Assembly: GCA_002269645.1 (NCBI GenBank)
Contig: NIVC01003499.1
Location: 1 to 64,000, forward strand
Length of the DNA stretch: 64,000 nucleotides
Reading direction: 5' to 3'
Source of the DNA: Macrostomum lignano
Taxonomy: Eukaryota
The position numbers and the translations under genes are program-made. The notes under the pieces were generated by a model that was not told where the DNA came from, made no database searches, and saw only the letters and a list, made by a program, of their open reading frames with translations. This document shows positions 1-20,070 of the stretch, piece by piece. The first letter of the stretch is position 1. Each line of letters opens with the position of its first letter.

Positions 1-3000
1 ACCTCGGAGCTCGACAGGCGACAGGCGCACGAGGCAGCTGTGGCGCTACAGGCAGGTCATCTCCGTGGAGCACGCGGTGCAGACCTTCCGCGGAGCTGGG
101 CGTCGAGGAACAGAGGCGGCACGCCCTCATCGAGGCCGTCACTCGCTGGGAGTTCGCGCTGAGGCACCTGCGGTCTCTGCCGGCTCTGCTGCAGCTGTGA
201 AGGACGTGTGCCGCTTGGAAGCTGAATTTGAGCATGGATAAAGCTAAGCAGCAATTCCTGCGTGTGGTTGGCAGGAATGAGAGTAGGCATTGTCTGCTGT
301 TGCGACTTTCTAGTCATGGACTCATGTCTTAGTTCATCTGGGGCCTGTGCTATAGTAAATTTATATTAAACTCCTAAATAAGAGTAATTCTAGTCGTAAT
401 TCAAAAACAACAAGTTTTATTACCCTGTGAAAGAGGCTGGCGTGAGATACGAGCGCGTAAGCAATAAAACCATTTTAGGCTACAAGCCTACGAATTTAAT
501 TAAGTTGATAGACAAGTCAATAGAAAATGGTTTAACTGCTATCGTAGTTAATTGCTCCCATTTGATATAAACAACTAACACTCGTATAAGAAATATCGTG
601 TAGGAAGGGTCTGCTTGATTCTCATTGATCCGAAATTGTGATAGTACGAAATTCTTCGAAAAAGCTTGTCCTTTGCTTAAATTGCCTGTATATCTTTAGA
701 CACGCACTCCTAAAATTCACTCGTAAACGGCAACTCTTAGCTTCTAGCTCCTACTCCCCGCTTCTTATTCTATAGCACGCGACAAACCTTAATGAGGTCT
801 CCTAAATTCACCAAGGAGTCCTCCTACGTGCTTAAAAGGAGCCTCCTAGCTCTTAAAATTTACTCTTGATTCTATAGCACAGAAAAGCCATCTAGGAGCA
901 GGAGCTAGGACTTAGGACACTTCTTAAGGATAGACGAGTATTCTATAGTACGCGGCACTACTAAGGATTCCGTAAGTGTTGATTTTGGAGGTGAGGTGGT
1001 GTCAACCCTCCTCGCCTCTCATTGGCTGGCGCCCCGATCACTAGGTGATCGATACCCGTATCGATATCGGCGCTCGGCGCGCGCGCGCGCGCCGCAGGCG
1101 CAAGCGCCGCAGGCGACCCTCCCAGCCGCAGGCGCACCTACCGATATTAGATCCCAATAAATCAATCAGATCCCAAATCAATCAGATCCCAAATCAATCA
1201 GATCCCAAGCGCACCCACCGAGCCGCAGGCGCCCATGCAGCAGGCGCCCCTCCCCGCCGCACGCGCCCTCCCCCGACATGTATGCCGCAGGCGCCCCCCG
1301 TCTCAGGCGCCCCTCCCGATATGTATGCGCACTCTCCCTATATGTACACCGATATGTATGCAGCAGGCGCCCGAGTGTACACTCCCCGATATGTGTGTAC
1401 ACCGATATGTAGTCATCGATACGGGCCTTTTCCCTCTCTCACCTACATCTCAACTAGCGAAATCGAACCCAGGTCCGCCCATACTAGGACACTACACGGT
1501 TGGGGTATAGGGAGCGAGAAGTTTCAACCCTAACGCTGACGCAGCCCTGTACAGTGAGAGTGTACGGGCAGAGAGGGTGGCGCGGACAGAGAACCAGCCA
1601 CTAGTTGTTATACTGTTGAAGCATAGGGAGCGAGAAGTTTTAACCCGATGCTGACGCAGCCCTGTACACTGAGCGTGTACGGGCAGAGGGTGGGTGGAAA
1701 GAGATGTGAATAACACAGCCTGCTGCAGGAGCCGGATAGAGAGGCGCATGCTAGGACAGAGAGGTAGTGTGAGTCACACACACACCCCACAGAGAAAGCC
1801 ATACAGAGGATAGAGAGCTCCCCCCAGTTGCAGGGGACAGAGAGGCAGGCTGGGTATGCAGGGGCATGCGAACCGTCAAGGGCCACGCGAGGATAGAGTG
1901 GAGGAGCAGAGATGTGTTTGGACAGAGAGCCAGCCACGTGTGCGTAGTGTGAGGAACAGAAACATATGGAGCAGGAGGGAGATAGGAAGCAAACGCGCAG
2001 GGTAAGGGAGCCACACAGGGCGGTACAGTGAGACACGGGCAGGGGTGGAGCCGTGCGTGGACAGAGCTGAACGGCACGGTCAGCTGCAGGAATAGGATGA
2101 TAGAGAGGCGCGGAGGGGGACAGAGAGCAGTGTGCAGGGTAGGCAGCCACGCAGGCTGGGGAACAGAGAGGCGCGTGTCAGCCAGTTGCAGCCCGGGACA
2201 GAGAAGTATGAAGGGGCCTGGGACAGAGTTCCGAGCAAGGCACAGAGGTAGGGTCCTGTAGCTATGTATAGGCAGGGAGCCACGCGAGGGCAGGACAGGG
2301 GAGCAGACATGCAAGTTGCATGCAAGGCCAGAGAGGTGTGCGCGGAGGGAGACAGAGAGCAGTGTGTAGGGGTAGGTAACAGCAAACTTTAGTAGCGGCG
2401 CGTGCGGGACGGAGAAACCAGTCAGAGCATACAGAGACGTTACAGAGAGGTACACAAGCAGAGACCAAAGCGAGCAGAGCACATGTGTAGGGACAGAGAC
2501 GTGAGGGAGAATCGACCAAAACACGCTATGTATTTTCAAAAGTTGGTTTTAGTGCAACATGTTTAATAGTGGGTAGTATAATAGTATGTACATAGTAGGT
2601 ATAATAGTAGTAATAATAGTAAGCATATTAGCCCAAAAGGTAGACTAAAACAGGCTAAACTGTGTGTACGCATCCTCATCACCCCACAAGCCCCCTCTCC
2701 CGCCAGACTCACTCTACCAAACCCTCCTGTATTGCTGCATGAAGGAAAATATAGTGTAAAAATACAGATCTTAACCGTCAGACCGCTGAAATCAGGGCAC
2801 ACTAGAGGGGTTTCGGGGTCTGCATGCTCTATGTAAGCTGCTTGAGGAGGTTCCAAGGGCGTTGTGAGGGTTTCCATTATGTTTTGAAAAAAACTAGAGG
2901 CTTAAATACAACGTTTTATTCAAAAGTAGGTTATTTTAATGAAATAGCTGACACAATCATTGTCGAGAGTAGAAATTTTTATAAGAAACCAGGCATTTTA

Positions 3001-6000
3001 GCAAAAATAAACCTTCAAACCACATAAAATTGAATAAAAAGCAGACATTTTCAATTATAAACCGCAAGTATTTTAATAGAAAAGTAAGCAAACAAGGCAC
3101 AAAACCAGCAAATTTTACCTTTTTATTTTAATGTTACTGATAAGGTAGAGAGTAGAAACTTGTGAGCTGTACGGAGTTAGAAAGTATTAACCATTATGTA
3201 TCGTATGAATTATTAGTTCAGTACCAGCCATTGGTCAAGCGAGCATTTATGAAGTTATTACGAGTGATGAAGGGATAGAGAGCTATATACAGGAAGACAG
3301 TATCCTTCTAAACCACACGAACAGATTGCTAATAGAGATAAGCTTTGTCTGTGTGCAGTATGAGTAAGCGAAGGCGGGGCAAATACTTTTCCACATGCCG
3401 GACAGAACAGTATTGTGCTAGGATTTCTCTCGAAATCGCGGTACGTTACTAGTTTTTATCACACCATCCAGATGCGTCAACTAGTCAGCAGTAGTCATTT
3501 ATATGTTATTAGAACTTACAAACCCAGGTCAAGTAAATATTACAAAGAGTATATTACGTACACACGCCAACTCGAATACCAAGCCATACTAGTCTACTTG
3601 CAGTGCTCCTGGAGGGAAGGGACGGCGGGGTGTACATCCGGCAGGGTGGGCGTCCAGCGAGTGTACATCTGACAGGATGGGTGTTCAGCAAGTGTACATC
3701 TGACAGGGTGGGCGTTCAGCAAGTGTACCTTCAGCGTCGAGTAGGTGTACACCCGTCAGTGGGAACTCAGCCCCTCCCACCAATGTCGTGTGCATGCGGT
3801 TAGTCAGTATAGTGGTGGGGTAGACGGTGCAGGAAGGAAACCCAGATGCTGACGCTGCCCTGTACAGCGAGCAACCAGCCCTCCTGTAGCAGGAGGGGGA
3901 CAGAGAGTGCGTGGAGGCAGTAGGAGATAGAGGACGCTACCCGGCATGTCGCAGCACGCGGCGCGGGACAGAGAGGCAGTGTGTAAGTCACCCCCGCGAG
4001 GACAGAGAGCTCCCTGGCAGGAGGCGCGGGACAGAGAGGCGGTGAATCACACCCCACGGAGAGAGCCGTACAACGAGCTTCCCCACCCGAGTCCGGTAAA
4101 TATTACAGAGTATTACGTGCACACGCCAGCCCTGAATACCAAGCCATACTAGTCTACCTGCAGTGCTCCCAGAGGGAAGGGATGGTCAGGAGTTACACAC
4201 CAAGAATGCATTCATACAAAGAGTACACAACTCGAGCCAGACACCAAGTCACAGTCTACTTACAGTAGAGATGGTAGATTAATAGCAAGATTATATTACA
4301 ATTAGACCTCCCTAGCACATGAGGAGTGAAATTCAATAATAATTGAATTCAATAATAATACAACATTTAGACGTAGTAATTTAATTACAAAATACCACTA
4401 ACACTGAGCCAACGAATTGTAGGTTACAAAGGAGTTGCCACTCATATGGAAAGCCAGTATAATGCAGGTGTATATTATTAAAACATAGACAAAAACGATG
4501 CAGACGTATATACACACTATTGATTTTGTACATGTACATTTCGGCATATTACCACACATCGCAGGCACATATTATATATCGGGGATAGGTTAAAATACAC
4601 ACATCGTAGATGTAGAAGCAGACACAATGCAGGAAAATTATGATACGAGTGTACATATTAGTGCGTAAAAGTATCATATTATGACACCCTGTAGCACATA
4701 TTGACATAATGCAGGGGAAAATATTGACAGAAATAGTACACAATTGTAGAGGTAACAACCCGCCAACTAGTAAGGACATCCAGCACTTGTTCAGGTTTTT
4801 ATTATTTCGAGACGAGTGTCATGCCCCCGCAAGAGATCTTATCAGAAATTTGTTGAACTCCACTGCAACTCTCCCCAGAGCCTCCAAATGTGAGTTTTTA
4901 ACCCAGGGTCGAGTACAAAGGACCCGCCCACTCTTAACCCCAAGGGGTGATCGTAGCGGAGACCAAGTACAGTGCGGACGGAGAGGGGTAACAGAAAGCG
5001 CTGCATCAGACCGCAGGGCTGCATTCCTCCCCCGAGGTAGGCGCGTCAGCTCCCACTCCTCATTTAACCATCAAGTAAACTAAAGAAGTCAAGCAGAAAG
5101 CCTTACAATCACCCGCAACCAGCACAAGTAAGAGTACTTTCCACTAGAGAGCCATAGTGCAAGATTCGCGAGCCAAGTTGAAGAAGCACACCAAATTACA
5201 CTAAAGACATATGTATTAAAAAGCATACCGGCACCTCTACAAAAACACAGTATGTACCGATTAAAGTTGCTTTTGGTGCAGTGTATTTAATAAAAAGCAG
5301 GTACCTAACACAAAAGTAGGCATCAATGCAGTGCACGGGCTAAACTGTATTTACAAACGCAGGGCAACGAACTACACACAATGTAGCGCATAGACATAAT
5401 TGTACGCATAAATGTACGCAATTTCCGGTATATAGGACCAAATGTACACAATGTACACAAACACACACACACACACACACTCAGGCGCATCCTGCAGCGC
5501 ATCCTGCAGCACCGATCGCCGCAGGCGATGGCGCCATCGGCAGGAAGCTCTTGCTGTGAATACGCCTGAGTGTGTGTGTGTGTGTTTGTGTACATTGTGT
5601 ACATTTGGTCCTATATACCGGAAATTGCGTACATTTATGCGTACAATTATGTCTATGCGCTACATTGTGTGTAGTTCGTTGCCCTGCGTTTGTAAATACA
5701 GTTTAGCCCGTGCACTGCATTGATGCCTACTTTTGTGTTAGGTACCTGCTTTTTATTAAATACACTGCACCAAAAGCAACTTTAATCGGTACATACTGTG
5801 TTTTTGTAGAGGTGCCGGTATGCTTTTTAATACATATGTCTTTAGTGTAATTTGGTGTGCTTCTTCAACTTGGCTCGCGAATCTTGCACTATGGCTCTCT
5901 AGTGGAAAGTACTCTTACTTGTGCTGGTTGCGGGTGATTGTAAGGCTTTCTGCTTGACTTCTTTAGTTTACTTGATGGTTAAATGAGGAGTGGGAGCTGA

Positions 6001-9000
6001 CGCGCCTACCTCGGGGGAGGAATGCAGCCCTGCGGTCTGATGCAGCGCTTTCTGTTACCCCTCTCCGTCCGCACTGTACTTGGTCTCCGCTACGATCACC
6101 CTTGGGTTAAGAGTGGGCGGGTCCTTTGTACTCGACCCTGGGTTAAAAACTCACATTTGGAGGCTCTGGGGAGAGTTGCAGTGGAGTTCAACAAATTTCT
6201 GATAAGATCTCTTGCGGGGGCATGACACTCGTCTCGAAATAATAAAAACCTGAACAAGTGCTGGATGTCCTTACTAGTTGGCGGGTTGTTACCTCTACAA
6301 TTGTGTACTATTTCTGTCAATATTTTCCCCTGCATTATGTCAATATGTGCTACAGGGTGTCATAATATGATACTTTTACGCACTAATATGTACACTCGTA
6401 TCATAATTTTCCTGCATTGTGTCTGCTTCTACATCTACGATGTGTGTATTTTAACCTATCCCCCGATATATAATATGTGCCTGCGATGTGTGGTAATATG
6501 CCGAAATGTACATGTACAAAATCAATAGTGTGTATATACGTCTGCATCGTTTTTGTCTATGTTTTAATAATATACACCTGCATTATACTGACTTTCCATA
6601 TGAGTGACAACTCCTTTGTAACCTACAATTCGTTGGCTCAGTGTTAGTGGTATTTTGTAATTAAATTACTACGTCTAAATGTTGTATTATTATTGAATTC
6701 AATTATTATTGAATTTCACTCCTCATGTGCTAGGGAGGTCTAATTGTAATATAATCTTGCTATTAATCTACCATCTCTACTGTAAGTAGACTGTGACTTG
6801 GTGTCTGGCTCGAGTTGTGTACTCTTTGTATGAATGCATTCTTGGTGTGTAACTCCTGACCATCCCTTCCCTCTGGGAGCACTGCAGGTAGACTAGTATG
6901 GCTTGGTATTCAGGGCTGGCGTGTGCACGTAATACTCTGTAATATTTACCGGACTCGGGTGGGGAAGCTCGTTGTACGGCTCTCTCCGTGGGGTGTGATT
7001 CACCGCCTCTCTGTCCCGCGCCTCCTGCCAGGGTAGCTCTCTGTCCCTCCGCGGGGGTGACTTACACACTGCCTCTCTGTCCCGCGCCGCGTGCTGCGAC
7101 ATGCCGGGTAGCGTCCTCTATCTCCTACTGCCTCCACGCACTCTCTGTCCCCCTCCTGCTACAGGAGGGCTGGTTGCTCGCTGTACAGGGCAGCGTCAGC
7201 ATCTGGGTTTCCTTCCTGCACCGTCTACCCCACCACTATACTGACTAACCGCATGCACACGACATTGGTGGGAGGGGCTGAGTTCCCACTGACGGGTGTA
7301 CACCTACTCGACGCTGAAGGTACACTTGCTGAACGCCCACCCTGTCAGATGTACACTTGCTGAACACCCATCCTGTCAGATGTACACTCGCTGGACGCCC
7401 ACCCTGCCGGATGTACACCCCGCCGTCCCTTCCCTCCAGGAGCACTGCAAGTAGACTAGTATGGCTTGGTATTCGGAGTTGGCGTGTGTACGTAATATAC
7501 TCTTTGTAATATTTACTTGACCTGGGTTTGTAAGTTCTAATAACATATAAATGACTACTGCTGACTAGTTGACGCATCTGGATGGTGTGATAAAAACTAG
7601 TAACGTACCGCGATTTCGAGAGAAATCCTAGCACAATACTGTTCTGTCCGGCATGTGGAAAAGTATTTGCCCCGCCTTCGCTTACTCATACTGCACACAG
7701 ACAAAGCTTATCTCTATTAGCAATCTGTTCGTGGTGGTTTAGAAGGATACTGTCTTCCTGTATATAGCTCTCTATCCCTTCATCACTCGTAATAACTTCA
7801 TAAATGCTCGCTTGACCAATGGCTGGTACTGAACTAATAATTCATACGATACATAATGGTTAATACTTTCTAACTCCGTACAGCTCACAAGTTTCTACTC
7901 TCTACCTTATCAGTAACATTAAAATAAAAAGGTAAAATTTGCTGGTTTTGTGCCTTGTTTGCTTACTTTTCTATTAAAATACTTGCGGTTTATAATTGAA
8001 AATGTCTGCTTTTTATTCAATTTTATGTGGTTTGAAGGTTTATTTTTGCTAAAATGCCTGGTTTCTTATAAAAATTTCTACTCTCGACAATGATTGTGTC
8101 AGCTATTTCATTAAAATAACCTACTTTTGAATAAAACGTTGTATTTAAGCCTCTAGTTTTTTTTTCAAAACATAATGGAAACCCTCACAACGCCCTTGGA
8201 ACCTCCTCAAGCAGCTTACATAGAGCATGCAGACCCCGAAACCCCCTCTAGTGTGCCCTGATTTCAGCGGTCTGACGGTTAAGATCTGTATTTTTACACT
8301 ATATTTTCCTTCATGCAGCAATACAGGAGGGTTTGGTAGAGTGAGTCTGGCGGGAGAGGGGGCTTGTGGGGTGATGAGGATGCGTACACACAGTTTAGCC
8401 TGTTTTAGTCTACCTTTTGGGCTAATATGCTTACTATTATTACTACTATTATACCTACTATGTACATACTATTATACTACCCACTATTAAACATGTTGCA
8501 CTAAAACCAACTTTTGAAAATACATAGCGTGTTTTGGTCGATTCTCCCTCACGTCTCTGTCCCTACACATGTGCTCTGCTCGCTTTGGTCTCTGCTTGTG
8601 TACCTCTCTGTAACGTCTCTGTATGCTCTGACTGGTTTCTCCGTCCCCGCACGCGCCGCTACTAAAGTTTGCTGTTACCTACCCCTACACACTGCTCTCT
8701 GTCTCCCTCCGCGCACACCTCTCTGGCCTTGCATGCAACTTGCATGTCTGCTCCCCTGTCCTGCCCTCGCGTGGCTCCCTGCCTATACATAGCTACAGGA
8801 CCCTACCTCTGTGCCTTGCTCGGAACTCTGTCCCAGGCCCCCCTTCATACTTCTCTGTCCCGGGCTGCAACTGGCTGACACGCGCCTCTCTGTTCCCCAG
8901 CCTGCGTGGCTGCCTACCCCTGCACACTGCTCTCTGTCCCCCTCCGCGCCTCTCTATCATCCTATTCCTGCAGCTGACCGTGCCGTTCAGCTCTGTCCAC

Positions 9001-12000
9001 GCACGGCTCCACCCCTGCCCGTGTCTCACTGTACCGCCCTGTGTGGCTCCCTTACCCTGCGCGTTTGCTTCCTATCTCCCTCCTGCTCCATATGTTTCTG
9101 TTCCCTCACACTACGCACACGTGGCTGGCTCTCTGTCCAAACACATCTCTGCTCCTCCACTCTATCCTCGCGTGGCCCCTTGACGGTTCGCATGCCCCTG
9201 CATACCCAGCCTGCCTCTCTGTCCCCTGCAACTGGGGAGGGAGCTCTCTATCCTCTGTATGGCTTTCTCTGTGGGGTGTGTGTGTGACTCACACTACCTC
9301 TCTGTCCTAGCATGCGCCTCTCTATCCGGCTCCTGCAGCAGGCTGTGTTATTCACATCTCTTTCCACCCACCCTCTGCCCGTACACGCTCAGTGTACAGG
9401 GCTGCGTCAGCATCGGGGTTAAAACTTCTCGCTCCCTATGCTTCAACAGTATAACAACCTAGTGGCTGGTTCTCTGTCCGCGCCACCCCTCTCTGCCCGT
9501 ACACTCTCACTGTACAGGGCTGCGTCAGCGTTAGGGTTGAAACTTCTCGCTCCCTATACCCCACAACCGTGTAGTGTCCTAGTATGGGCGCGACCTGGGT
9601 TCGATTTCGCTAGTTGAGATGTAGGTGAGAGAGGGAAAGAGGCCCGTATCGATGACTACATATCGGTGTACACACATATCGGGGAGTGTACACTCGGGCG
9701 CCTGCTGCATACATATCGGTGTACATATAGGGAGAGTGCGCATACATATCGGGAGGGGCGCCTGAGACGGGGAGGGCGCCTGCGGCATACATGTCGGGGG
9801 AGGGCGCGTGCGGCGGGGAGGGGCGCCTGCTGCATGGGCGCCTGCGGCTCGGGTGGGTGCGCTTGGGATCTGATTGATTTGGGATCTGATTGATTTGGGA
9901 TCTGATTGATTTATTGGGATCTAATATCGGTAGGTGCGCCTGCGGCTGGGAGGGTCGCCTGCGGCGCTTGGCGCCTGCGGCGCGCGCGCGCGCGCCGAGC
10001 GCCGATATCGATACGGGTATCGATCACCTAGTGATCGGGGCGCCAGCCAATGAGAGGCGAGGAGGGTTGACACCCACCTCACCTCCAAAATCAACACTTA
10101 CGGAATCCCTTAGTAGTACGGGCCCCTGCACCAGTGGCGTAGCCAGGGCCCCCCCCCCCCAATCGCCTGGGGTGGGGTTGGGCGCGCGGGTACCAAAAAC
10201 CATGAGGCAATTGAGTGCCTGCGGCGCCAAAATGAGTGCCTGCGGCGCCAAAATGAGTGCCTGCGGCGCCAAAATGAGTGCCTGCGGCGCCAAAATGAGT
10301 GCCTACGGCGCCAAAAGTGAATGCCTGCGGCGCAAAACGAGTGCCTGCGGCGCCAAAATGAGTGCCTGCGGTGCCAAAATGAGTGCCTGCGGCGCCAAAA
10401 CGAGTGCCTGCGGCGCCAAAATGAGTGCCTGCGGTGCCAAAATGAGTGCCTGCGGCGCCAAAATGAGTGCCTGCGGTGCCAAAATGAGTGCCTGCGGCGC
10501 CAAAATGAGTGCCAATGGCAATGGTGGCAATGGCGTAAGGCATGGCCAGCCAGGCCAACCCGCCCCCCCCAATTGATATTCCTGGCTACGCCACTGCCCT
10601 GGGGCCCGTGCTATAGAATACTCTTAACTCCTAAATCCTTAAGAGTGTCCTAACTCCTTGCTCCTAGCTGGCTTTTCTGTGCTATAGAATCAAGAGTAAA
10701 TTTTAAGAGCTAGGAGGCTCCTTAAGGACGTTAGGAGACTCCTGGGTGAATTTAGGAGAACTCATTAAGGTCCGTGGCATGCTATAGAATTAGGAGAGGA
10801 AGTCTAGGAGCTAGGAGCTAGGAGCTGGCTTTTAGGAGTCATTCTAGGAGCGTGTGTCCTATAGAATGAGAAAATTTCGCTCCTAACTCTTGACTCCTAA
10901 GCAAGAGTTCAAGGGCCAATTTTCACTCTTAGACAAGCTAGGATTATAATGTTTTCGGACAGCGAATCGGATTCTGATGAGGAAGGAGTCAATGATAGAC
11001 GCCGTCGACAATTTAAGGCAAGAATTAATATTTTTGAAGAAGATCCAGCCGAGAGTGCTATGCGTTTTAGACTTAACGATATCCAGCTTTCAAGCCTAAC
11101 AGATAGAATTCGACACAGAATCGAACATCCAACATCAGTGTGTCCTAACAAATTCCAACATTCCAATATCACGTCTTGCCACATAGCAATCTTCGCATTC
11201 TTAGTTATGGTTGTACTAAACGCACCAAAGAGAACCTCTTTGCGTGCAGCGACGGCTCTCACAAATGATTTTTTTTGAGCAATTTGCATTTTCACTCCTG
11301 AGATTCAATCCTTAAGGACCGTAAATTTAGGATTGTGATATAGCACACAATTCTCTATCATCCTTAAACAATTGCGCAACACTCCTTGAACACACCCCCA
11401 CTCCTAGGCTGCACTCCTTGCAAGAACTCCTAGCTCCTAACTCTTAACTCCTGAAATCTATAGCACACAAAATTCAATCACTCCTTGTCAAGAGTACTCT
11501 TGTGTCCTAGCTCCTAACTCCTGATTCTATAGCACGGGCCCCTGCACTTGTCTCTGTTTTCTCTCCTCTGTCTAGCCCAGTCTTGCTATTCTTATCTCTC
11601 TCTCCCTCGCTGCCTTCTGATTGGCTCTTCTCTCTCGCCTCTTTCCTTCGTCGCGCACTCCGCCCTTCATTGTCTTATCTACACCCACCCCCCACTAATT
11701 ATATGCCTTAAATATACTCCCTTGGGCCCGGCACCCCCACTGGGAGACACGCACTCGTGCACACGCTCACACAGGCTGTACAGCAGCTTTTTGACTTTTT
11801 AATCGTCAGGCAGTGTACACTCTCTGTGCCTTGGGGTTGGCACTCATTAATTTGAATGGGACAACAAGCCCCAAATGAAGTGGCTGCATACGGAATCGAA
11901 CCCACAGTCACAGCCAGGTATCATTTCCATTCAATCACCAGGTGGGAGGCCGGCATTCGCGAGTTTGTCGAGACCTGGCGTGCCCTCAGCGGCTACCTGG

Positions 12001-12236
12001 CCACCAGGGGTGCCAGGTTCCCCGACGCAATTTTCCCCATCACGCTGCACGCCCACCCGGCCGATGAGATGCGGCTGGCCGCGCTGCTACCTCACAACGG
12101 AGTCTGGGGCCGCTGCATCGTGGGCCTGGTGCAGCTGCTCATGGAGGCTCAGAACGCCGTGCTGGACGCTAGCGGGGTTCACTGCGACGAGATTGACATC
12201 TGCCAGGTGGGTGCCAGCTCGAAAGGACAGGCATGC

Positions 12237-12325
<89 letters not shown>

Positions 12326-13814
12326 TACAGACAGACAGACGGACAGATGGACAGTAAGACAGACATGCAGACAGACAGACAGACAGACAGACAGACACAG
12401 ACATTGGCTTGGATATATTATAGTCTATCCAATCACTACACTGCTATCAGTAGGCTAGTTGTGAGTTTTATCTCTATAATGAATCAATCTGTTTCCTAGG
12501 CTGACGCGGCCTCGATGATCTCGTACGACCCGGACTCGGACCTGCTGCCCGCCCTGCTGGCCAACAGCGCCTACTCCCTGCGGCCCGGCAGGGGCTGCCA
12601 GGTGGCCTACAACTTTGCCGGCCTGCAGCAGCAGCTCGCCGAGCTTCTGGTCCGGGGCAGACTGAGGCTGACTGGCCACCTGCCGCAGATGCTGTACAAG
12701 GAGGAGTTCAACTTGATGGAGCAGTTCCTGTTGCTCGACCAGGCATGTTGCTTTGATATATTTGGGGAAACTGGAGGCTTTTGGTGACAGCCAAATTACA
12801 GCTAGTTTTGATTATGTTTACAGCCAAATTACAGCTAGTTTTGATTATGTTTACAGCCAAATTACAGCTAGTTTGCATTATGTTTACAGCCAAATTACAG
12901 CTAGTTTGGATTCTGTTTACAGCCAAATTACAGCTAGTTTTGATTATGTTTACAGCCAAATTACAGCTAGTTTGCATTATGTTTACAGCCAAATTACAGC
13001 TAGTTTGGATTCTGTTTACAGCCAAATTACAGCTAGTTTGGATTCTGTTTACAGCCAAATTACAGCTAGTTTTCATTCTGTTTACAGCCAAATTACAGCT
13101 AGTTTGGATTCTGTTTACAGCCAGATTACAGCTAGTTTGGATTCTGTTTACAGCCAGATTACAGCTAGTTTACAATCAGCCACACTCTCGCCCTCAAAAT
13201 CACGTCCTCAGGCGGTGCCGCAGTGCCGCTCTCCCAGCAGCTCCATGGTGAGCCACGCGCTGAGCTCCGAGCTGCCCAGCAGCCCGCCCGTCATCACGTC
13301 ACTGCTGGAGGAGCTGCTGCCACCAGCCGTGAGCTTCCTGACCTCGCTGGCACCGAAGGAGCCGTCGCAGCTGCTGCACGACTTCATGACGAAGTCGCTG
13401 CGAATGCCGCAGGGGCTGCCAGAGCCGCTCAACCGCTGCGTCACCATCGACCACGTCCGCCTGCTGTGGCTGTCGCTGGACCGCCTGCGCTGCCAGCAGC
13501 TCGCCGACGACGGCTTCGAGCCGTTCCGCGACTGCCGCGGCCTCGAGGCCGCACCGCTAGAGGAGCCGCTCCGCGAGCTGCTGCTCCCGCGTGACCTCCG
13601 CAACCGGCGCAGCCTCCTGCTGGAGAAGCTGCACAGCCTGATGAGGCTAGAGCTGGCGAGCCGGCCGAATCTGCTGGACTTGCCACTGTCGGAGGTTGGC
13701 ATCGTGTACACCGACTATGATGGCGTCTTCGACGGCTGGGACGAGCGACTGTTGTGCAAGCACTCGGCCGCCATCTGGATGGCCGTCTTCGCGCTGGAGG
13801 GCTCGCGGGCCTGA
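1..13814 (+). CDS. RNF213: RNF213 (mysterin)-like E3 ligase, C-terminal exons only; 5' part lies outside the window
   Basis: Four segments are collinear with the RNF213 C-terminus as recalled. ~1-196 reads LWRYRQVISVEH...LRHLRSLPALLQL (cf. IWSCRKRITVEY...LRLVKFLPEILAL), with a frameshift near 90. 11942-12206 reads WEAGIREFVETW...LLPHNGVWGRCIVGLVQLLMEAQN. 12500-12742 reads ISYDPDSDLLPALLANSAYSLRPG (cf. ISYEVERDLTPLILSNCQY). 13212-13814 ends LLCKHSAAIW...stop. Phases of the last three exons agree (AG/GT, one GC donor). The junction after 196 is uncertain. Confidence 0.8.
341..10125 (-). mobile_element. PIF/Harbinger-type non-autonomous element (copy 1, ~620 bp of its own sequence), right TIR split by the giant palindrome
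   Basis: Left TIR GGGCCTGTGCTATAG at 341. Right TIR is split into TTCTATAGTACG (941-952) and CGGGCCC (10119-10125). 3-bp TSD CTG at 338-340 and 10126-10128. Sequence 700-952 aligns with the reverse complement of 10602-10870 (copy 2). Confidence 0.85.
956..10118. mobile_element. 9.16-kb giant palindrome / foldback element with CACTA-like termini
   Basis: 957-5487 is the reverse complement of 5563-10117 wherever compared, and the ORF track is mirrored (e.g. 3415-3672+ vs 7245-7634-). Spacer is 75 bp (5488-5562). Termini are CACTACTAAGG and CCTTAGTAGTA, each flanked by CGG (953-955, 10119-10121). Subterminal GCCGCAGGCG repeats are present. No recognisable transposase. The palindrome is certain; the CACTA class is an inference. 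Confidence 0.9.
10132..10596. mobile_element. hAT-type MITE with an internal 21-bp tandem repeat
   Basis: 16-bp TIRs CAGTGGCGTAGCCAGG / CCTGGCTACGCCACTG. 8-bp TSD CCCTGCAC at 10124-10131; the right copy is restored (CC CTG + CAC) once the Harbinger at 10602-11541 and its CTG duplication are removed. Interior is ~15 copies of AAAATGAGTGCCTGCGGCGCC. Confidence 0.85.
10602..11541 (+). mobile_element. PIF/Harbinger deletion derivative (copy 2, 940 bp)
   Basis: Perfect 18-bp TIR GGGCCCGTGCTATAGAAT. CTG TSD at 10599-10601 and 11542-11544. Several subterminal CTATAGCAC/GTGCTATAG repeats. Carries a transposase N-terminal remnant. Confidence 0.9.
10949..11278 (+). pseudogene. Harbinger transposase N-terminal fragment (HARBI1-like)
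   Basis: MFSDSESDSDEEG..RRRRQFKARINIF..AMRFRLNDIQLSSLTDRIRHRIEHPT matches the typical Harbinger N-terminus (RR..F..R.N.F...F..RFRL....L...I...L.HPT). It then degenerates, and the DDE core is absent. Confidence 0.7.
11735..11941 (-). mobile_element. tRNA-derived SINE-like repeat (copy with B-box)
   Basis: Reverse strand has a perfect B-box GGTTCGATTCC (11892-11902) and an A-box-like TGATTGAATGG ~25 nt upstream. Body core ATCGT..GGCA(G)TGTACAC..CTGTGCCTTGGGG(G)TT is shared with the copies at ~20.3, 37.5 and 52.0 kb. Confidence 0.6.
12236..12400. repeat. (GACA)n microsatellite in an RNF213-like intron
   Basis: Direct inspection. Confidence 0.95.
12783..13175. repeat. 33-bp minisatellite (CAGCCAAATTACAGCTAGTTTTGATTATGTTTA), ~12 copies, intronic
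   Basis: Direct inspection; lies in intron 12743-13211. Confidence 0.95.
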
Positions 13815-15744
13815 ACTAGCCGCGATTTTTACTACTGACTGGGGACTAGCAGCAGTAGTGTGATGCAAATGTTTTTAACGCTTTAATTGCTACTTATCTA
13901 TTGCCTAAATGCTCGTAGTAGTCCGATGCGGACTTTCTCGATTTTTTGTTTTCTATTTATCCAGCTCTTGACTAGTTCCGTTGAAAACGTTACCGTGACA
14001 AAGAGTCACTGCAAACAGCTCCGGTGGAGTTGCAGAATCTTAGAAGAGTCACTAAAATGTCATCCAGGAGTCGTGTTGGCTCTTTACTTTCTACTGACTC
14101 AATCAAGTAAACTAATAGAGTTGTTATGAATGTGAAATGCGATTCTGATTCATAGTGACGCAGGTGCGCTTTAGATGCAACTCATTGATTCTACAGCGAC
14201 TCTGGCAGGCCTCAGATAGGACTCAACGGCCCCGGAGTCGACAGTAAAAACCCACAAATTGACTCTTTTGGTGACTAGCATTGCGATGACATCTGATCGT
14301 TTTAGAGTCGTCTAGAGTGACTTCTTTGCTATTTTACCTGACTCTGCAACCACTGGGCGCTTTTTGGCCTAGATAACGTTTTCATCGGGAATAGTCTGTT
14401 GGGAACATTATCTGACGCTTTGATTACTACTTATCCAGAGCTTAACTAGTAGCCTGACGCGAAAATGCTTTCTGACCGGCTATTTGACTGTAATTGCTTA
14501 TTTTACTATTACCTAAGAAGAATTATTGTAAAAAAATATGGCTCCAAAATTAACAATTGGCTAGTTTTACGCGTTTTCAAAAGAACATTGGTCAGTATCA
14601 AAGCTCGTAAATCTTAAAAAAAACATTGATTAGAATCTTCTAAACAATTTATAAATTCAGCTATGCAAAACCAGACAAGCTATAAGTAGTATAGCCGGAG
14701 TTTTCCTGTCTAATATTTACTCCAAGCCACAGATTATAAAATAACTAGATAGGCCATTCAGGCATATATACTTAGTAAACCAGCTTTCTACTTCCAGTTC
14801 AGTAGCAAAGAAAAGTAAATGAGCTATTTTTTTTTAAATAAAGGCAGCTGAATTGACTTTGATAAGTTTAGAAGCCCAAAGCTCGCAGGCGTGAACAACT
14901 TTGCTAATTGGTTCAGCAATAATGTACATTAGCCAGTCCACTGAAATGTACATGGCAGCTTTAGGCTGAAATTCCGAGAAAGGCAATAAAAATTGGGGCG
15001 GAGCGCGGGGGTAGAGTGGAAAGGCGCGGTTGAAGGGTTTAAGCTGGGGACCAATGAATGAGCCTTGGCTTAAAAAATACGTTAAAATGCTTCTGTTTAA
15101 CTTTCTACTGAACTGAAAGTAGTTTACACGCAAATGTGCTGAGTGGCCCATCTAGTTATTCTAGTATCTGTGCTCTATTTTTATAAAGTTTTTTGTTTCT
15201 CTATTATAATATCAAATTCTACTTTCATATCATTCTAATTACAAGTATAAGTCTGGCTTTTTTATTACTATATTACTTATTTATTTCGTTTATGATTTTT
15301 TTTATTTTACAATCTCCTGTTACGGCTTGTCAATCATCGTTAATATCGATTGATTGATTTGTTTATTTTTGTGTTTAACTATTTGTCTGTACTTTAAATT
15401 GCACTTTTAAAGTGGCCAGCTTCTTATTTTTGCAGTAAATTTTCTGTAATCTGTGAACGGGTCAATTTTGATCTACAATTTCTATTCTGCGCCCTGAATA
15501 ATCTCCCTACCCCAATTTCATTATGTAGAGTTCAAAGTTCCGGTGTGTTGTTTGACGAGTTCCAAAGACTAATCTTCCACCTGTTGCGAAATATGAAATA
15601 AATTTAACTAAACACTTTTAAACCCTTGTTGCTTTTCCCACATTCTGTAATACGTTTTGTAAATGTTTTGTTTTTTGCAAACTTCACTGGCTTTTGTTTT
15701 TTCTTGTGTTTTTTATCTCTGTTTGAATCAGGGCCTTAACTCTC

Positions 15745-16557
15745 CCCCACTCATCTGACCCCACTCCCCCACTCCCCTGTCCGCACTCTCCCCCACTCCC
15801 CTGTCCGCACTCTCCCACTCCCCTGTCCCCACTCTCCCACTCCCCTGTCCCCACTCTCCCACACTCCCCTATCCCCACTCTCCCACACTCCCCTGTCCCC
15901 ACTCTCCCACTCCCCTGTCCCCACTCTCCCACACTCCCCTGTCCCCACTCTCCCACTCCCCTGTCCCCACTCTCCCACACTCCCCTATCCCCACTCTCCC
16001 ACACTCCCCTGTCCCCACTCTCCCACTCCCCTGTCCCCACTCTCCCACACTCCCCTGTCCCCACTCTCCCACTCCCCTGTCCCCACTCTCCCACACTCCC
16101 CTGTCCCCACTCTCCCACTCCCCTGTCCCCACTCTCCCACACTCCACTGTCCCCACTCTCCCACACTCCCCTGTCCCCACTCTCCCACACTCCCCTGTCC
16201 CCACTCTCTCACACTCCCCTGTCCCTACTCTCCCACACTCCCCTGTCCCCACTCTCCCACACTCCACTGTCCCCACTCTCCCACACTCCCCTGTCCCCAC
16301 TCTCCCACACTCCCGTGTCCCCACTCTCCCACACTCCCGTGTCCCCACTCTCTCACACTCCCGTGTCCCCACTCTCCCACACTCCCTGTCCCCACTCTCC
16401 CACACTCCCCTGTCCTCACTCTCCCACACTCCCGTGTCCCCACTCTCTCACACTCCCGTGTCCCCACTCTCTCACACTCCCCTGTCCCCACTCTCCCACA
16501 CTCCCGTGTCCCCACTCTCCCACACTCCCCTGTCCCTACTCTCCCACAGTCCCCTGT
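15745..16557. repeat. 22/24-bp C-rich minisatellite (CCCCACTCTCCCACACTCCCCTGT)
   Basis: Direct inspection. Confidence 0.95.
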
Positions 16558-16897
16558 CAAACAAACGGATTGACAATAGACAAAGAAAAGGCACCATCAG
16601 AACGAGTGTCTAGTAATGTGAACTACGCACGTATTTAGAGTTTGGGTTTGGGTTTCGTCGTTCTTAACCTTATGGTTGGAATGTTTCGAAATGCTGCGCG
16701 CATTATATGTCAATTAGTTTACCTTAGTCTGTACTAATGCATCAAGGAAGGAATGTATAAACAAACTCTGATGTTCGAACTTTGGCATCATATAGGTAAA
16801 TCACAAATGTTTATATTATACTAGCCATACAATGTGTCTGGTGTTTGTACAAGCACATGAATAAACTCGCAGAGGCATTGTCACGAGTTGTCAGCTC

Positions 16898-17329
16898 TCA
16901 GTAGTGAAATACCCCGAATGCCACCGCCACGCAGAACAGGCTGTCGTTCATGAAGATGTCCTGAACATAGTTGTCGCTGTCGCTGTCCCACAGACACCGG
17001 CAGGCCATCTTGACTCCCTGGCCCCTCTGCTCGCCAATGGCCACTTGGACAACGAATTTGTACCGCTCGAATCCGTTGGCCCTCAGCCGGGCCTTGATCT
17101 CGTCTGTGAGCTCCTTGCACAGTCCGCTTGTGGCCTCCTTATCGTAGGCCTTGTCCGTTAGCCGCTCCACGAGCGCTTCGTGAATGACTGGCTTGGCCAA
17201 CAGCGGACGGAATTTGCTCTCGAAGTTGGGCCGAATCACGTAGGTGTTTGCAACCTCCTCGCCTTCCTTCTGCTGTTGCTGTTGCTGCTGCTGCTGAGGC
17301 TGCTCTGTGGCCACTGGCTCGTCCTGCAT
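16898..17329 (-). CDS. TCTEX1D2: Tctex1 domain-containing protein 2 (dynein-2 light chain, DYNLT2B), intronless, 143 aa
   Basis: NTYVIRP.F..KFRP...FERYKFVVQVAIGEQRGQGVKMACRCLWDSDSDNY..DIFMNDSLFCVAVAFGVFHY closely matches TCTEX1D2 as recalled. Confidence 0.92.
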   Translation of the reverse strand: MQDEPVATEQPQQQQQQQQQKEGEEVANTYVIRPNFESKFRPLLAKPVIHEALVERLTDKAYDKEATSGLCKELTDEIKARLRANGFERYKFVVQVAIGEQRGQGVKMACRCLWDSDSDNYVQDIFMNDSLFCVAVAFGVFHY

Positions 17330-17848
17330 CTTGCCGAAGTCTCTTTAGCTGCGTGTTGAGTCTGTGATGTGGCAAGAGCTTCGCTTCTGTGGAATGCGAA
17401 ACTTTTAGCAGCTATGCGCTCATTATATTATCGCCTGTCTCTAGCTTGCATTTCTACTCCTGCTCCGCTGCGCATTCAAGCTTTTGGGCAGGGGCTGTAC
17501 TGACACCGCGTACACTTGGCTTTTAGTTGTCATGGTTGCAGTTGGGGAGAGACTGGCGGAGCGAAGGCTAGAGAGAGAAAGAGAGAGAAAAAACGGAGTA
17601 ATGGAGTGAGAGACGCGAGGTACACTCAGAAGAATGTACGAGGGAGAGAGACAGACTGCGTTGCTAAGGGCGCCCCAACCTCTGTCTCAAAGTTACTGTT
17701 CTCTGGGCCACAACGTTCAGTTCAGTTGGCTGAGCGGCTTTTAAATAAGCCGTTCTATTTGAACGTTTTCGGCTCAATCTAGCGAAGCTTTTATCATCTT
17801 GAGCCGAGTTCTGAACGCCGAAGTCAAGCCAGCAGCTGAACAGTCCAG
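17330..17848. promoter_or_regulatory. Putative bidirectional promoter between TCTEX1D2 and ENO4 with imperfect RFX X-box-like sites
   Basis: 519 bp separate the divergent ATGs. X-box-like GTTGTCATGGTTGC at 17526-17539 and GTTGCTAAGGGCGC at 17660-17673; only one half-site matches well in each. Confidence 0.45.
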
Positions 17849-20070
17849 ATGGAGGACGCCAAAGTTCAAGCGATGCGCGCCCACCAGCTGCACCAGCTGA
17901 AGAAGGAGGCCATTGTCTATTATCAATCCAACGGTGTCCCGTTGAAAATGGAGGACGCGCTCAACCAGATGTTCCGCGACCGGCCCGACTGCGTGTTCGG
18001 CTACCTGTCTAATTACTTTGAGCAGCTCGCTCTGCCGCCGGTGCTGAGCGGTGTCCGCTGTCACAAGAGCTTCGACGCTCGCGGCTGGGAGACCCTGGCC
18101 GCCGAGGTGACCTGCCGGCACCGGAACGAAGACCGAGTCGCCGGTAGAAGTCGTGCCTCGCTCCAGGTGACCGTCGGCGAGCACGACAAGCCGGAGGAGC
18201 GCGAAAGGGAAGCTCAGGAGCTTCGCCACCACGTGGAGGCCGCGCTGACTCTGGTGAACGAAGGCCCGTTGAAGCAGTTCGCCGAGCAGGGATTCGATCC
18301 GAGAGATCAGCGCGCCATCGACGAGTTCCTTCTGATGCAGCTGCAGGCCGAGGAGGACCGCGTCAAGGCGGAGCTGCAGCGCGAGCTGGACGAAGCCGGC
18401 GCGGCCTCCGGAGCGGAGGGTTCGGGCGCTGACGAGAACGCGTCGCCGCAGCATCAGCCGGCGGCTGCGGCTGGCGGCAAAGCCGGTGGCAGCGCGAAGA
18501 AACGCGGAGGCGGCAAAGGGGGCAAAGAGGTTCGGATGGGATGCTGGTTTAGGGATATTTTTCCCTGGGACATTTTCAGCTGTGTATAGCAGCGGTAGGG
18601 TAGCCACAGGTAGCGGAAGCTCTCAGTGGTAGTGTAGGGTAGCGGAAGCTTGAGTAGGTAGAGTAGGTAGCGGAAGCTTTGAGTAGGTAGAGTAGGTAGC
18701 GGAAGCTTTGAGTAGGTAGGGTAGGTAGCGGAAGCTTTGAGTAGGTAAAGTAGGAAGCGGAAGTCCAACCTACATGTAAACTCAATCGTCATCCCATACT
18801 CGTACGCTGGTACCAGATCGTCATCGTGCCCGACGAGCCCCGCGAAGGCCTCTTCCCGGGCTGCCTGGCGCTCAGTTGCCTCTCCGCAGCCTGCGCCGCC
18901 GCTGGCGCCAGCGCTGCCGGAGTGCCACTCTATCGACACCTTCGTCAGCAGCTGCTGGCTGACGAGTCCCACAAAGACTGCGCGGACAAAGACTGGCGCC
19001 TGCCGCTGCCGATGCTGACCATTCTGAGCGGCGGCAAGGCCAGCCCCGGCAAGAGCAACTGCGTCAAGGAGTACATGATCGTGCCCAGGCCGGGACTGCC
19101 CTTCGACCGGGTGCTTCGCGACTCGGTCGCCGTCTACCAGCAGGTGGCCAAGACGCTGAGCGTCAAAGGCGGCCCGGCGGCTCGGTTCACCAACGATGCT
19201 GGCGCGTTGAACACCGTCATTGACCGGCCGGAAGCCGGGTTCGACCTCATCAATGACGCGCTGAAGGAGCTGGAACTGACGGACTCGTTCGATCTGGCAG
19301 CGAACATCGCCGGGCACGAGCTGTTCGACTACGAGAAGGGAAAATATGACCTGGCTCAGGGCGCGCAGAAGTCGCCGGACGAGACTGCCGACTTTCTGGA
19401 CGACCTCAGCGCTAAGCAGGCCTCGCTGGTGGCGCTGATCGATCCGTTGAGACGCGTCGAGCGCGACGCCTGGCTGCGGCTGTGCCAGAAGGCCTCGCAA
19501 CGGTGTCTCATCGTTGGTGACGCGACTCAGCATCGGCCGGGAAGGCTGCTAGCTGAGCTGCAGCAGATGGAGGCGGAGGAGGCTGAGACTGAGCAGCCGC
19601 CGGCTGAGGAAGGCACTCAGCAGCAGCAGCAGCAGCAGCAGCCGCTTCTGACCTCTGCCTGGGTCGCTCGGCTGCAGCAGAGGAACACCGTCACGGAGCT
19701 GTTCGACTGCGCCAAGCGGATGCGCAGCTCCGGCCAGGTTGTCGTGGTCGCCGTCGGACCGAGCGACAATGGCGACACGACAATTGTCGATCTGGCGGTT
19801 GCCATGGGCGCCAGGTACCTGAAGCTGGGCGCGCCGGTTCGAGCCGAGCGCATCGACAAGCTGCAGCGGCTGGCGGAGATCGGCGAGGAGCTGCGGGCTG
19901 CCGACCTGCTGAGCCAGTGGGAGCAGCTCAGTCCGCCTCTGGTCAGGCCGCGCGGCTCCGAGACGCCCGAAGGTGAGCAGCAGCCGCCGCAGCAGCAGCA
20001 GCCAGCCTCCGAGCATCAACCTTCGACTACCAAGAGTCGCAAGGGCTCATCGACTGCGTCCAAAGCTTAA
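17849..20070 (+). CDS. ENO4: Enolase 4 (enolase-like, cilia/flagella-associated), 2 exons: 17849-18529, 18817-20070
   Basis: LKKEAIVYYQSNGVPLKMEDALNQMF..P.CVFGYLSNYF, GKASPGKSN, AGHELFDYEKGKYDL, LIDPLRR and DLAVAMGARYLKLGAPVRAERIDK follow ENO4. Phase-0 intron GAG|GTTCGG...TACCAG|ATC. Confidence 0.9.
18590..18765. repeat. ~29-bp minisatellite in the ENO4 intron (GAGTAGGTAGAGTAGGTAGCGGAAGCTTT)
   Basis: Direct inspection. Confidence 0.85.

What the first reader, a model, noticed from the sequence alone, without database searches (positions are those of the whole stretch)
956..10118. 9.16-kb giant palindrome: two ~4.5-kb near-identical inverted arms around a 75-bp spacer, inserted as one mobile unit
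Seen: 957-5487 is the reverse complement of 5563-10117, and symmetry stops exactly at the two host junctions. Removing the element rejoins a split Harbinger TIR and leaves coherent TSDs of neighbouring elements. Established: long near-perfect palindromes with short spacers are unstable (cruciform/hairpin cleavage), and known foldback elements usually have shorter arms or a long central loop. Inference: this is a foldback transposon that is essentially all TIR, possibly an undescribed family moved in trans.
Basis: partly seen in the sequence, partly recalled or inferred. Interest (0 to 1): 0.9.

Follow-up and report, generated by a model that had tools for sequence, protein, structure and literature searches.

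The report
Giant palindromic insertion in flatworm DNA
A 9.2-kb DNA palindrome with no protein-coding capacity (two almost identical 4.5-kb inverted arms around a 75-bp centre) is a clean insertion in one of the three genome copies of the flatworm Macrostomum lignano. It looks like a very large foldback-type mobile element, but it lies at the low-quality end of a PacBio contig and no second copy was found, so raw-read confirmation is needed.

Summary
Window 957-5487 is the reverse complement of 5563-10117: 2 substitutions in 4,525 aligned bases, plus 28 one- to four-base length differences, nearly all in homopolymers.

The window is the first 64 kb of Macrostomum lignano contig NIVC01003499.1 (Mlig_3_7: Canu on PacBio CLR, Pilon polish). 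Two homeologous contigs carry the uninterrupted empty site (tatagTACGGGCcc). The palindrome is therefore an insertion, with a short target duplication: ACG/TACG plus a 4-nt filler, or 6-bp ACGGGC with one extra base.

The arms encode nothing recognisable. Their outer 450 bp carry ordered short repeats, including GCCGCAGGCG five times per arm. The same 9-mer occurs elsewhere only in the tandem array of the host element.

Best reading (about 0.55): a non-autonomous foldback-type DNA transposon, made by fold-back dimerisation of one transposon end and moved in trans.

Caveats: it lies 956 bp from a contig end, the outer left arm and left flank look like unpolished, thinly covered consensus, and no second copy could be searched for. 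One-off break-repair capture (0.2) and a partly artefactual interior (0.17) remain open. The 'Harbinger' label for the host element is not supported. Moderate interest.

The parts
957..5487 (+). Left arm of the palindrome (4,531 nt). The outer tip reads ACTACTAAGGATTCCG. Consensus quality is lower than in the right arm.
   Evidence: It lacks 30 nt relative to the right arm at 25 homopolymer sites. The deletion rate per GC run falls from 0.28 at the outer end to 0 within about 800 nt of the centre.
5488..5562 (.). 75-nt centre ('spacer'). It is asymmetric but a degenerate palindrome, contains one GCCGCAGGCG, a 12-nt x2 repeat and the perfect 14-nt palindrome CGATGGCGCCATCG, and is flanked by (AC)n/(GT)n.
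   Evidence: No similarity to the SMRTbell adapter. Self-complementarity is reached by 2 of 1000 shuffles.
5563..10117 (-). Right arm (4,555 nt), the reverse complement of the left arm and the better-quality copy.
   Evidence: No Pfam domain in any of six frames at E<=1 apart from one chance-level hit (FeoB_C, E=0.33). No protein homologue for any open frame of 75 aa or more.
950..956 (+). Left copy of the target duplication. Either ACG (950-952) plus a 4-nt filler CGGC (953-956), or ACGcGGC, meaning 6-bp ACGGGC with one extra C.
   Evidence: Comparison with the empty sites of L001 and L002. The left flank carries an excess of 1-2-nt indels relative to the homeologs.
10118..10123 (+). Right copy of the target duplication (ACG, or ACGGGC). 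The last 4 nt of the palindrome (TAGT) also match the target just upstream.
1091..1293 (+). Subterminal array of five GCCGCAGGCG motifs, all in one orientation, 135-340 nt from the left tip.
   Evidence: 11 matches in the window against 0.08 expected, all inside the palindrome.
9777..9981 (-). Mirror subterminal array of five GCCGCAGGCG motifs in the right arm.
1149..1382 (+). Further subterminal short tandem repeats (16 nt x3.5, 43 nt x2, 33 nt x2). Their mirror lies at 9740-9912.
697..956 (+). Left part of the host element: a long-TIR, MITE-like element present in all three homeologous loci and split by the palindrome.
10118..10868 (+). Right part of the host element. Inner termini are GGGCCCC..AGTGGCGTAGCCAGG. 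A 21-nt tandem array x14.4 (10212-10513) carries the 9-mer GCCGCAGGC ten times.

Best explanation
The feature is a non-autonomous, foldback-type DNA transposon in Macrostomum lignano. It is 9,161 bp long and consists almost entirely of two identical 4.5-kb inverted arms.

Proposed origin (inferred): one end of a parent transposon, with about 4.5 kb of adjacent non-coding sequence, folded back on itself at a short imperfect inverted repeat. That repeat is now the 75-nt centre. The strand was then copied back to its own tip, either during break or gap repair or by replication of a hairpin. The product is a head-to-head dimer with two identical, transposase-competent termini.

Proposed movement (inferred): a transposase encoded elsewhere binds the tips (ACTACTAAGGGATTCCG...) and the ordered subterminal GCCGCAGGCG and 16-nt repeats, and integrates the unit.

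Shown: it is an insertion into the inner terminus of an older long-TIR element in one of the three subgenomes, with a short target duplication. It is very recent, because the arms differ by 0.04% or less while the subgenomes differ by about 2-5%.
For: - The palindrome and its exact ends are confirmed.
- Two homeologous contigs of the same assembly hold the precise empty site.
- The flanks are collinear and in the same orientation across the site.
- A target duplication is present: ACG/TACG, or ACGGGC with one indel.
- No coding capacity.
- The termini look like a transposon's. GCCGCAGGCG occurs five times per arm in one orientation within 340 nt of each tip, against 0.08 expected in the whole window, alongside 16-, 33- and 43-nt subterminal repeats.
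- The 9-mer GCCGCAGGC occurs elsewhere in 64 kb only in the tandem array of the host element. This hints at a shared transposase or a targeting relationship.
- The centre is not a sequencing adapter and is a degenerate palindrome. That fits palindrome formation nucleated by a short inverted repeat, followed by stabilisation of the centre.
- Left-arm error density falls to zero near the centre, which suggests several reads cross the centre.
- The window has no N and therefore no scaffold join.
- Long insertions are the main difference between M. lignano subgenomes (PMC10733133).
Against: - Only one copy is known. No other arm, tip or host-element copy occurs in the window or in two 20-kb homeologous loci.
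- No transposase was identified, so the superfamily is unassigned.
- The target duplication is not clean. It needs either a 4-nt filler or a 1-nt indel, and the palindrome's last 4 nt match the target. Those features also fit end-joining.
- The element starts 956 bp from a contig end, in an assembly that was not polished with long reads.
- The left flank and outer left arm have an indel-rich, low-coverage-like consensus.
- No raw reads could be examined.
- Most of each arm is complex sequence, not the tandem subrepeats typical of classical FB elements.
Confidence: 0.55

Rival explanations
1. One-off break-repair product, not a transposon family. A linear DNA fragment with a hairpin-capped end, formed by fold-back at a short inverted repeat next to a double-strand break, was replicated into a palindromic dimer. 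That dimer was captured by end-joining at a staggered break in the host element.
For: The junctions look like end-joining. There is a 3-4-bp duplication, a 4-nt filler (CGGC) at the left junction, and 4 nt of microhomology (TAGT) at the right junction. A fold-back dimer automatically has two identical ends, so the exact symmetry at 957/10117 is expected. The centre is an asymmetric loop inside a degenerate short inverted repeat, which is the known signature of palindrome formation nucleated by a short inverted repeat (Tetrahymena rDNA, yeast and mammalian models; own knowledge). No second copy was found.
Against: Both ends are intact to the nucleotide, whereas end-joining usually nibbles ends. 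The outer 450 bp carry ordered subterminal repeat arrays typical of transposon ends. The GCCGCAGGC motif is shared with the host element, which would be a coincidence under random capture. The left junction lies in error-prone consensus, so the 'filler' may be a 1-nt error in a 6-bp duplication.
Confidence: 0.2
2. Partly an assembly artefact. A real transposon with long (about 1 kb or more) identical terminal inverted repeats is inserted here, but the assembled interior is wrong. A snap-back or chimeric PacBio read at the contig end mirrored the right arm, and a true left-junction read was joined to it through the identical repeat. The real middle of the element would then be missing.
For: The palindrome lies 956 bp from the contig end. 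The assembly is Canu 1.4 on CLR reads polished only with Illumina and RNA-seq short reads (Pilon), i.e. without a long-read polishing step, and 36% of the assembly length is in chimeric scaffolds. The left arm carries 25 homopolymer deletions against 3 for the right arm. The left flank has an indel-to-substitution ratio of 1.45 against 0.17 on the right side. Both point to very thin read support.
Against: The centre has no adapter sequence and is a 75-nt degenerate palindrome, not a tight turn. Error density in the left arm is zero within about 800 nt of the centre and rises outwards; a single mirrored read should be uniformly poor from the centre out. Two C/T substitutions and an (AC)2 length difference distinguish the arms. 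Mirror symmetry does not run to the contig end, as it does in typical missed-adapter contig ends. Canu trims palindromic reads, which by itself explains thin coverage and a contig break next to a real palindrome (own knowledge).
Confidence: 0.17
3. Wholly artefactual: nothing is inserted at this site in the animal, and the block is a chimeric read or a missed-adapter product.
For: Contig-end position and error-rich consensus.
Against: Both junctions join the same terminal sequence, in opposite orientations, to the two sides of one target site, with a target duplication. The flanks match the homeologs collinearly. A snap-back read would instead mirror the right flank. There is no adapter in the centre.
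Confidence: 0.03

Closest known systems
Tc4 of Caenorhabditis elegans (fold-back element: two 774-bp near-perfect arms and a 57-bp loop; own knowledge, Yuan et al. 1991)
   Same: The architecture is the same. The element is nearly all inverted arms of complex, non-tandem sequence with a very short loop. It is non-coding, moved in trans, and makes a short (3-bp TNA) target duplication, which is compatible with the ACG reading here.
   Different: The arms here are about six times longer (4.5 kb). There is no sequence similarity or shared tip. Tc4 is a multi-copy family with a known transposase-bearing variant, whereas only one copy is seen here and no transposase.
Drosophila FB / Tetris / Galileo-type foldback elements (PMC4079207)
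   Same: Long TIRs form most of the element, the middle domain is small and non-coding, the elements are non-autonomous, and internal repeats in the TIRs are thought to add transposase-binding sites.
   Different: FB-type TIRs are built largely of tandem subrepeats, and Tetris reaches 1,735 bp. Here only short arrays occur in the outer 450 bp and the rest is complex sequence. FB and Tetris make 8-10-bp duplications, whereas here 3-4 bp or 6 bp is most likely. Superfamily (Mutator or P) is unknown here.
Large palindromes nucleated by a short inverted repeat (Tetrahymena rDNA minichromosome; yeast and mammalian amplification palindromes; own knowledge)
   Same: Giant, near-perfect arms surround a short non-palindromic centre that lies within a short inverted repeat. 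This is the proposed way the dimer arose.
   Different: Those are chromosome-end or amplification structures, not discrete insertions with a target duplication at an otherwise intact locus.
Palindromic chimeric long reads (PacBio missed adapter or snap-back) that produce inverted duplications at contig ends
   Same: Position next to a contig end, thin and error-rich consensus on the outer arm, near-identical arms.
   Different: No adapter in the centre. Symmetry stops before the contig end at a junction that, together with the other junction, reconstitutes an empty site seen in two homeologs.

Membership tests
Foldback (FB-like) DNA transposons | Very long terminal inverted repeats that make up most of the element, with a short or absent middle domain | tested here: met
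   Arms are 4,531 and 4,555 nt and the centre is 75 nt.
Foldback (FB-like) DNA transposons | TIRs built of, or containing, tandem subrepeat domains | tested here: inconclusive
   Only short arrays are present (16 nt x3.5, 43 nt x2, 33 nt x2, 31 nt x3.2), together with dispersed GCCGCAGGCG and CTCTCTGTCC motifs. Most of each arm is complex sequence.
Foldback (FB-like) DNA transposons | Target-site duplication of 8-10 bp (9 bp for FB; Mutator superfamily) | tested here: inconclusive
   The empty-site comparison allows ACG/TACG plus filler, or ACGGGC (6 bp) with one indel. Up to 10 bp is possible only if the element's tips are asymmetric.
Foldback (FB-like) DNA transposons | Several copies at different loci, each with its own flanks | not testable with these tools
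   None in the 64-kb window or in two 20-kb homeologous loci. No DNA search of the M. lignano genome was available. Protein-level and metagenome searches were empty.
Foldback (FB-like) DNA transposons | Cognate transposase encoded by an autonomous relative | not testable with these tools
   No transposase domain in the arms. The rest of the genome could not be searched.
   The sequences flanking the GGGCCCC termini are TAC and GTG, which continue an inverted repeat running about 260 bp outwards. The only candidate flanking repeat is the palindromic hexamer CTATAG.
CACTA / CMC superfamily | CACTA...TAGTG termini with a 3-bp duplication | tested here: not met
   The left junction reads C|ACTACTAAGG, but the right end is CCTTAGTAGT|A with no terminal G. 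A 3-bp ACG duplication is possible but needs a 4-nt filler.
Missed-adapter / snap-back long-read artefact | Adapter or a tight turn at the centre, with mirror symmetry running to the contig or read end | tested here: not met
   No adapter similarity. The centre is a 75-nt degenerate palindrome. Symmetry stops at 957, and positions 1-956 match the homeologs' left flank.
Missed-adapter / snap-back long-read artefact | Located at a contig end with thin, error-rich support | tested here: met
   Window coordinates equal contig coordinates, so the palindrome starts at nt 957 of NIVC01003499.1. There is an excess of homopolymer deletions and small indels.

The most novel reading that the evidence does not exclude
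M. lignano carries an undescribed family of giant 'all-arm' foldback elements. Each is made by fold-back dimerisation of one transposon end together with kilobases of adjacent DNA. The family is still mobile in the laboratory DV1 lineage, is tolerated in the germ line despite arms that are essentially perfect 4.5-kb repeats, and may share its transposase with the GCCGCAGGC-bearing long-TIR element it inserted into. If so, an endogenous active DNA transposon system exists in this transgenesis model.
Probability: 0.2. Interest if true: 0.6.

Novelty: new member of a known kind. Interest (0 to 1): 0.4.

Why it matters
- Stability: if real, this is one of the longest near-perfect, short-spacer palindromes carried as a discrete insertion in an animal genome. 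Such structures are expected to be fragile through hairpin or cruciform cleavage. Its persistence bears on how the flatworm germ line handles palindromes and on how foldback elements arise.
- Recent activity: arm divergence of 0.04% or less, and absence from two homeologs, point to recent DNA-transposon or break-repair activity in the DV1 line. That is relevant to subgenome divergence, which is dominated by long insertions, and to the search for an endogenous transposase useful for M. lignano transgenesis.
- RNA: if transcribed, it would give a 4.5-kb hairpin RNA and so could be a small-RNA source.
- Assembly quality: if it is partly an artefact, it is a useful flag for contig ends in Mlig_3_7.

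Tried and rejected
- Coding capacity of the arms. A six-frame Pfam scan at E<=1 found nothing real (the first attempt by reference failed on stop codons). Pfam on the longest arm ORFs found nothing. A composite of all open frames of 75 aa or more, searched against 5.8 billion proteins, gave no hit. Exact look-up of nine arm, centre and junction ORFs found none in the collection.
- Structured RNA. Rfam on the whole window gave no match.
- Other copies. BLAST of the arm and of the flanking element against the window and the homeologous loci found none. Tip and host-TIR pattern searches with up to 3 mismatches found only themselves. The JGI metagenome scan with the 23-nt tip gave 0 hits. No other long inverted repeat occurs in 10118-64000.
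- Organism identification through the HSP70-like ORF failed, with hits of at most 33% identity. It succeeded through the Tctex1 ORF.
- SMRTbell adapter in the spacer: rejected.
- CACTA and Harbinger assignments: rejected on termini and target duplication.
- Literature. No report of foldback or palindromic elements in M. lignano or other flatworms was found.
- Considered and rejected: Helitron (has neither TIRs nor a target duplication), L1 twin-priming (gives non-overlapping inverted segments, not a duplicated palindrome), and a viral or hairpin-telomere concatemer junction (the arms have no genes).


Full report

Yes. A minus-strand self-BLAST of window 1-14,000 gives a single HSP, 957-10117 against 10117-957. 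The seeded repeat finder breaks the same diagonal into collinear blocks of 97-100% complementarity (apart from two low-identity secondary matches).

A global alignment places the left arm at 957-5487 (4,531 nt), the right arm at 5563-10117 (4,555 nt) and a 75-nt centre at 5488-5562. Within 4,525 aligned columns there are only 2 substitutions. Both are C in the left arm against T in the reverse-complemented right arm, 16 nt apart.

The other 28 differences are 1-4-nt length differences. In 25 of them the left arm is the shorter one, almost always in a C or G run. This is the signature of long-read consensus error, not of divergence. The arms are therefore essentially identical in the underlying DNA (0.04% divergence or less).

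The window contains no N, so the structure lies inside a contig and not across a scaffold join.

**2. Source and context**

A 143-aa Tctex1-domain ORF (16898-17329, minus strand) is an exact match to a Macrostomum lignano protein. Its contig is NIVC01003499.1 of GCA_002269645.1 (Mlig_3_7), 94,736 nt long. Window coordinates equal contig coordinates, so the palindrome begins 956 nt from the contig end.

Mlig_3_7 was assembled with Canu 1.4 from PacBio CLR reads, polished only with Pilon on Bowtie2-mapped Illumina reads and STAR-mapped RNA-seq data, then scaffolded with SSPACE (PMC5730564). The DV1 line carries three subgenomes (S, L1, L2) with about 2% SNP divergence. Long insertions dominate their differences, and 36% of the assembly length lies in chimeric scaffolds (PMC10733133).

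**3. It is an insertion**

The two paralogous Tctex1 genes led to two homeologous loci, L001 (NIVC01002283.1) and L002 (NIVC01000679.1). Both align collinearly, and in one orientation, to the window on both sides of the palindrome. Identity is 97% for 615-956 and 95% for 10114-10337.

Both homeologs carry the uninterrupted sequence '...gagtattctatagTACGGGCccctgcaccagtggcg...'. The filled site reads 'tatagTACG-CGGC-[ACTACTAAGG...CCTTAGTAGT]-ACG-GGCccc'. The unit is flanked by a short duplication of the target, which can be read two ways:
- ACG or TACG, plus four extra bases (CGGC) on the left.
- The 6-bp ACGGGC, with one extra C in the left copy. In this reading the inserted unit is exactly the palindrome.

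The left flank shows an excess of small indels relative to the homeologs: 16 small indels against 11 substitutions, compared with 86 against 519 on the right side. A 1-nt error in the left copy is therefore plausible. The last four bases of the palindrome (TAGT) also match the target just upstream of ACG. This could be chance or junctional microhomology.

The host sequence is an older element present in all three loci. It has roughly 260-bp inverted repeats that are 85% identical (about 697-956 and 10604-10868), inner termini GGGCCCC..AGTGGCGTAGCCAGG, and a 21-nt tandem array. The flanks of those termini continue the inverted repeat instead of forming a TWA duplication, so the 'Harbinger' label is not supported.

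**4. What the inserted DNA is**

It has no recognisable gene. No Pfam domain appears in any of the six frames at E<=1, apart from one chance-level hit. A composite of all open frames found no homologue among 5.8 billion proteins. There is no Rfam match.

Each arm is a mosaic:
- a GC-rich, strand-skewed outer 1.5 kb
- an AT-rich 1 kb
- a GC-rich block with 31-nt repeats
- a 43%-GC inner 1.5 kb ending in (AC)n

The outer 450 bp look like a transposon end. There are several short hairpins, then five copies of GCCGCAGGCG in one orientation 135-340 nt from the tip. All 11 matches in the window lie inside the palindrome, against 0.08 expected. A 16-nt repeat x3.5 and 33- and 43-nt repeats follow. 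One more GCCGCAGGCG sits in the centre.

The 9-mer GCCGCAGGC occurs elsewhere in the 64 kb, and in the homeologous loci, only in the 21-nt tandem array of the host element. This suggests the two elements are related or served by the same protein. That link is inference only.

**5. Real or artefact?**

Arguments for caution:
- The contig-end position.
- The asymmetry of the homopolymer errors (25 against 3).
- The indel-rich left flank.
- An assembly known to be chimeric in places.

Arguments for reality:
- Both junctions attach the same tip, in opposite orientation, to the two halves of one target site, with a duplication. A snap-back read would instead mirror the right flank, which 1-956 does not do.
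- The centre has no SMRTbell adapter similarity. It is a 75-nt degenerate palindrome (2 of 1000 shuffles), not a tight turn.
- Left-arm deletions per GC run fall from 0.28 at the contig end to 0 of 18 within about 800 nt of the centre. This is the pattern expected if many reads cross the centre and progressively fewer reach the flank. A single mirrored read should be poor throughout.
- The arms differ by two transitions and one (AC)2 unit.

Canu deliberately trims palindromic reads (own knowledge). A true palindrome is therefore expected to end up thinly covered and next to a contig break.

I estimate about 0.8 that a palindromic insertion of this form exists in the sequenced DNA. I estimate about 0.17 that a real long-TIR insertion has an interior mis-built from a chimeric read.

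**6. Mechanism**

Best-supported reading (0.55): a non-autonomous foldback-type DNA transposon. The fold-back and trans-mobilisation steps are inferred as follows:
1. One end of a parent element, plus about 4.5 kb of adjacent sequence, folded back at a short imperfect inverted repeat, which is now the centre.
2. The strand was copied back to its own tip, producing a dimer with two identical ends.
3. A transposase encoded elsewhere recognised the tips and subterminal repeats and integrated the unit.

The insertion, the target duplication, the recency and the lack of coding capacity are shown.

The main biological rival (0.2) is a one-off capture of such a fold-back dimer by end-joining. It is favoured by the filler and the microhomology. 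It is disfavoured by the intact tips, the transposon-like subterminal arrays and the motif shared with the host element.

**7. Comparison with known elements**

Architecturally this is closest to C. elegans Tc4 (774-bp arms, 57-bp loop, 3-bp duplication; own knowledge). It also resembles the FB, Tetris and Galileo group: long TIRs, a small middle domain, non-autonomous, 8-10-bp duplication for Tetris, and Tetris TIRs up to 1,735 bp (PMC4079207).

It differs in three ways:
- arm length (4.5 kb)
- complex arm sequence in place of tandem-repeat arms
- an unresolved target-duplication length

Membership of any superfamily cannot be claimed. CACTA and Harbinger criteria failed. The Mutator/FB duplication length is not established. 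Copy number and transposase are untestable here. No foldback or palindromic element has been reported for M. lignano or other flatworms in the searchable literature.

**8. Verdict**

- The 'single inserted unit' reading is strongly supported by empty sites.
- The 'foldback transposon family' reading is plausible but unproven.
- The 'Harbinger' label is unsupported.
- Novelty: a new member of a known kind (foldback, long-TIR, non-autonomous element) at the extreme of arm length.
- Interest: moderate (0.4), limited by the single copy and the contig-end position.
- Read mapping and a whole-genome BLAST of one arm would settle both open questions quickly.

Noticed in passing
window 697-956 + 10118-10868 (also L001 ~16990-17620, L002 ~15655-16290): The host element is itself foldback-like. 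It has roughly 260-bp inverted repeats (85% identical) studded with repeated 'TTCTATAG|CAC' and 'CTAGGAGC' motifs, and a central 21-nt tandem array. The window has 14.4 copies of that unit and 10 exact copies of the 9-mer GCCGCAGGC it carries; each homeolog has 4 exact copies of the 9-mer. The recurring palindromic hexamer CTATAG at apparent internal junctions may mark nested insertions into a preferred target.
   Followed up: partly
window 28042-30222 (- strand): A 726-aa uninterrupted ORF has a clear HSP70 domain (Pfam E=1.7e-61). Its best hits in 5.8 billion proteins are only 24-33% identical, and no M. lignano protein matches it. It is apparently an unannotated, highly divergent Hsp70-like gene.
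   Followed up: partly
window 43007-47835: A 4.8-kb satellite of a 24-nt unit (CTCCCTGTCTCTATCACTGTCACC, about 204 copies). It explains the long overlapping ORFs in several frames here, including a spurious 1,251-aa ORF.
   Followed up: yes
window 15684-16560: Another 24-nt-period tandem array, translating as GEWGQGSV-like repeats. It aligns in many registers to the homeologs, so its length probably differs between subgenomes.
   Followed up: no
window ~354 and ~612: Relative to both homeologs, the window lacks about 185 bp after position 354 and about 150 bp after position 612. L001 and L002 are almost identical to each other here (0-2 private differences in about 1.3 kb), while the window copy is the diverged one. 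This fits two close subgenome copies plus one more distant copy.
   Followed up: partly
window 16898-25053: A conserved gene cluster is shared by all three loci: a Tctex1-domain protein, a divergent enolase-like gene (644 aa, ENO4-like) and a DOMON/cytochrome-b561 protein. It is useful as an anchor for subgenome comparison.
   Followed up: partly
window 10977-13814: An annotated 383-aa gene overlaps a (CAGA)40 microsatellite (12236-12397) and a 33-nt x11.7 tandem repeat (12787-13171). The gene model may be repeat-derived.
   Followed up: no
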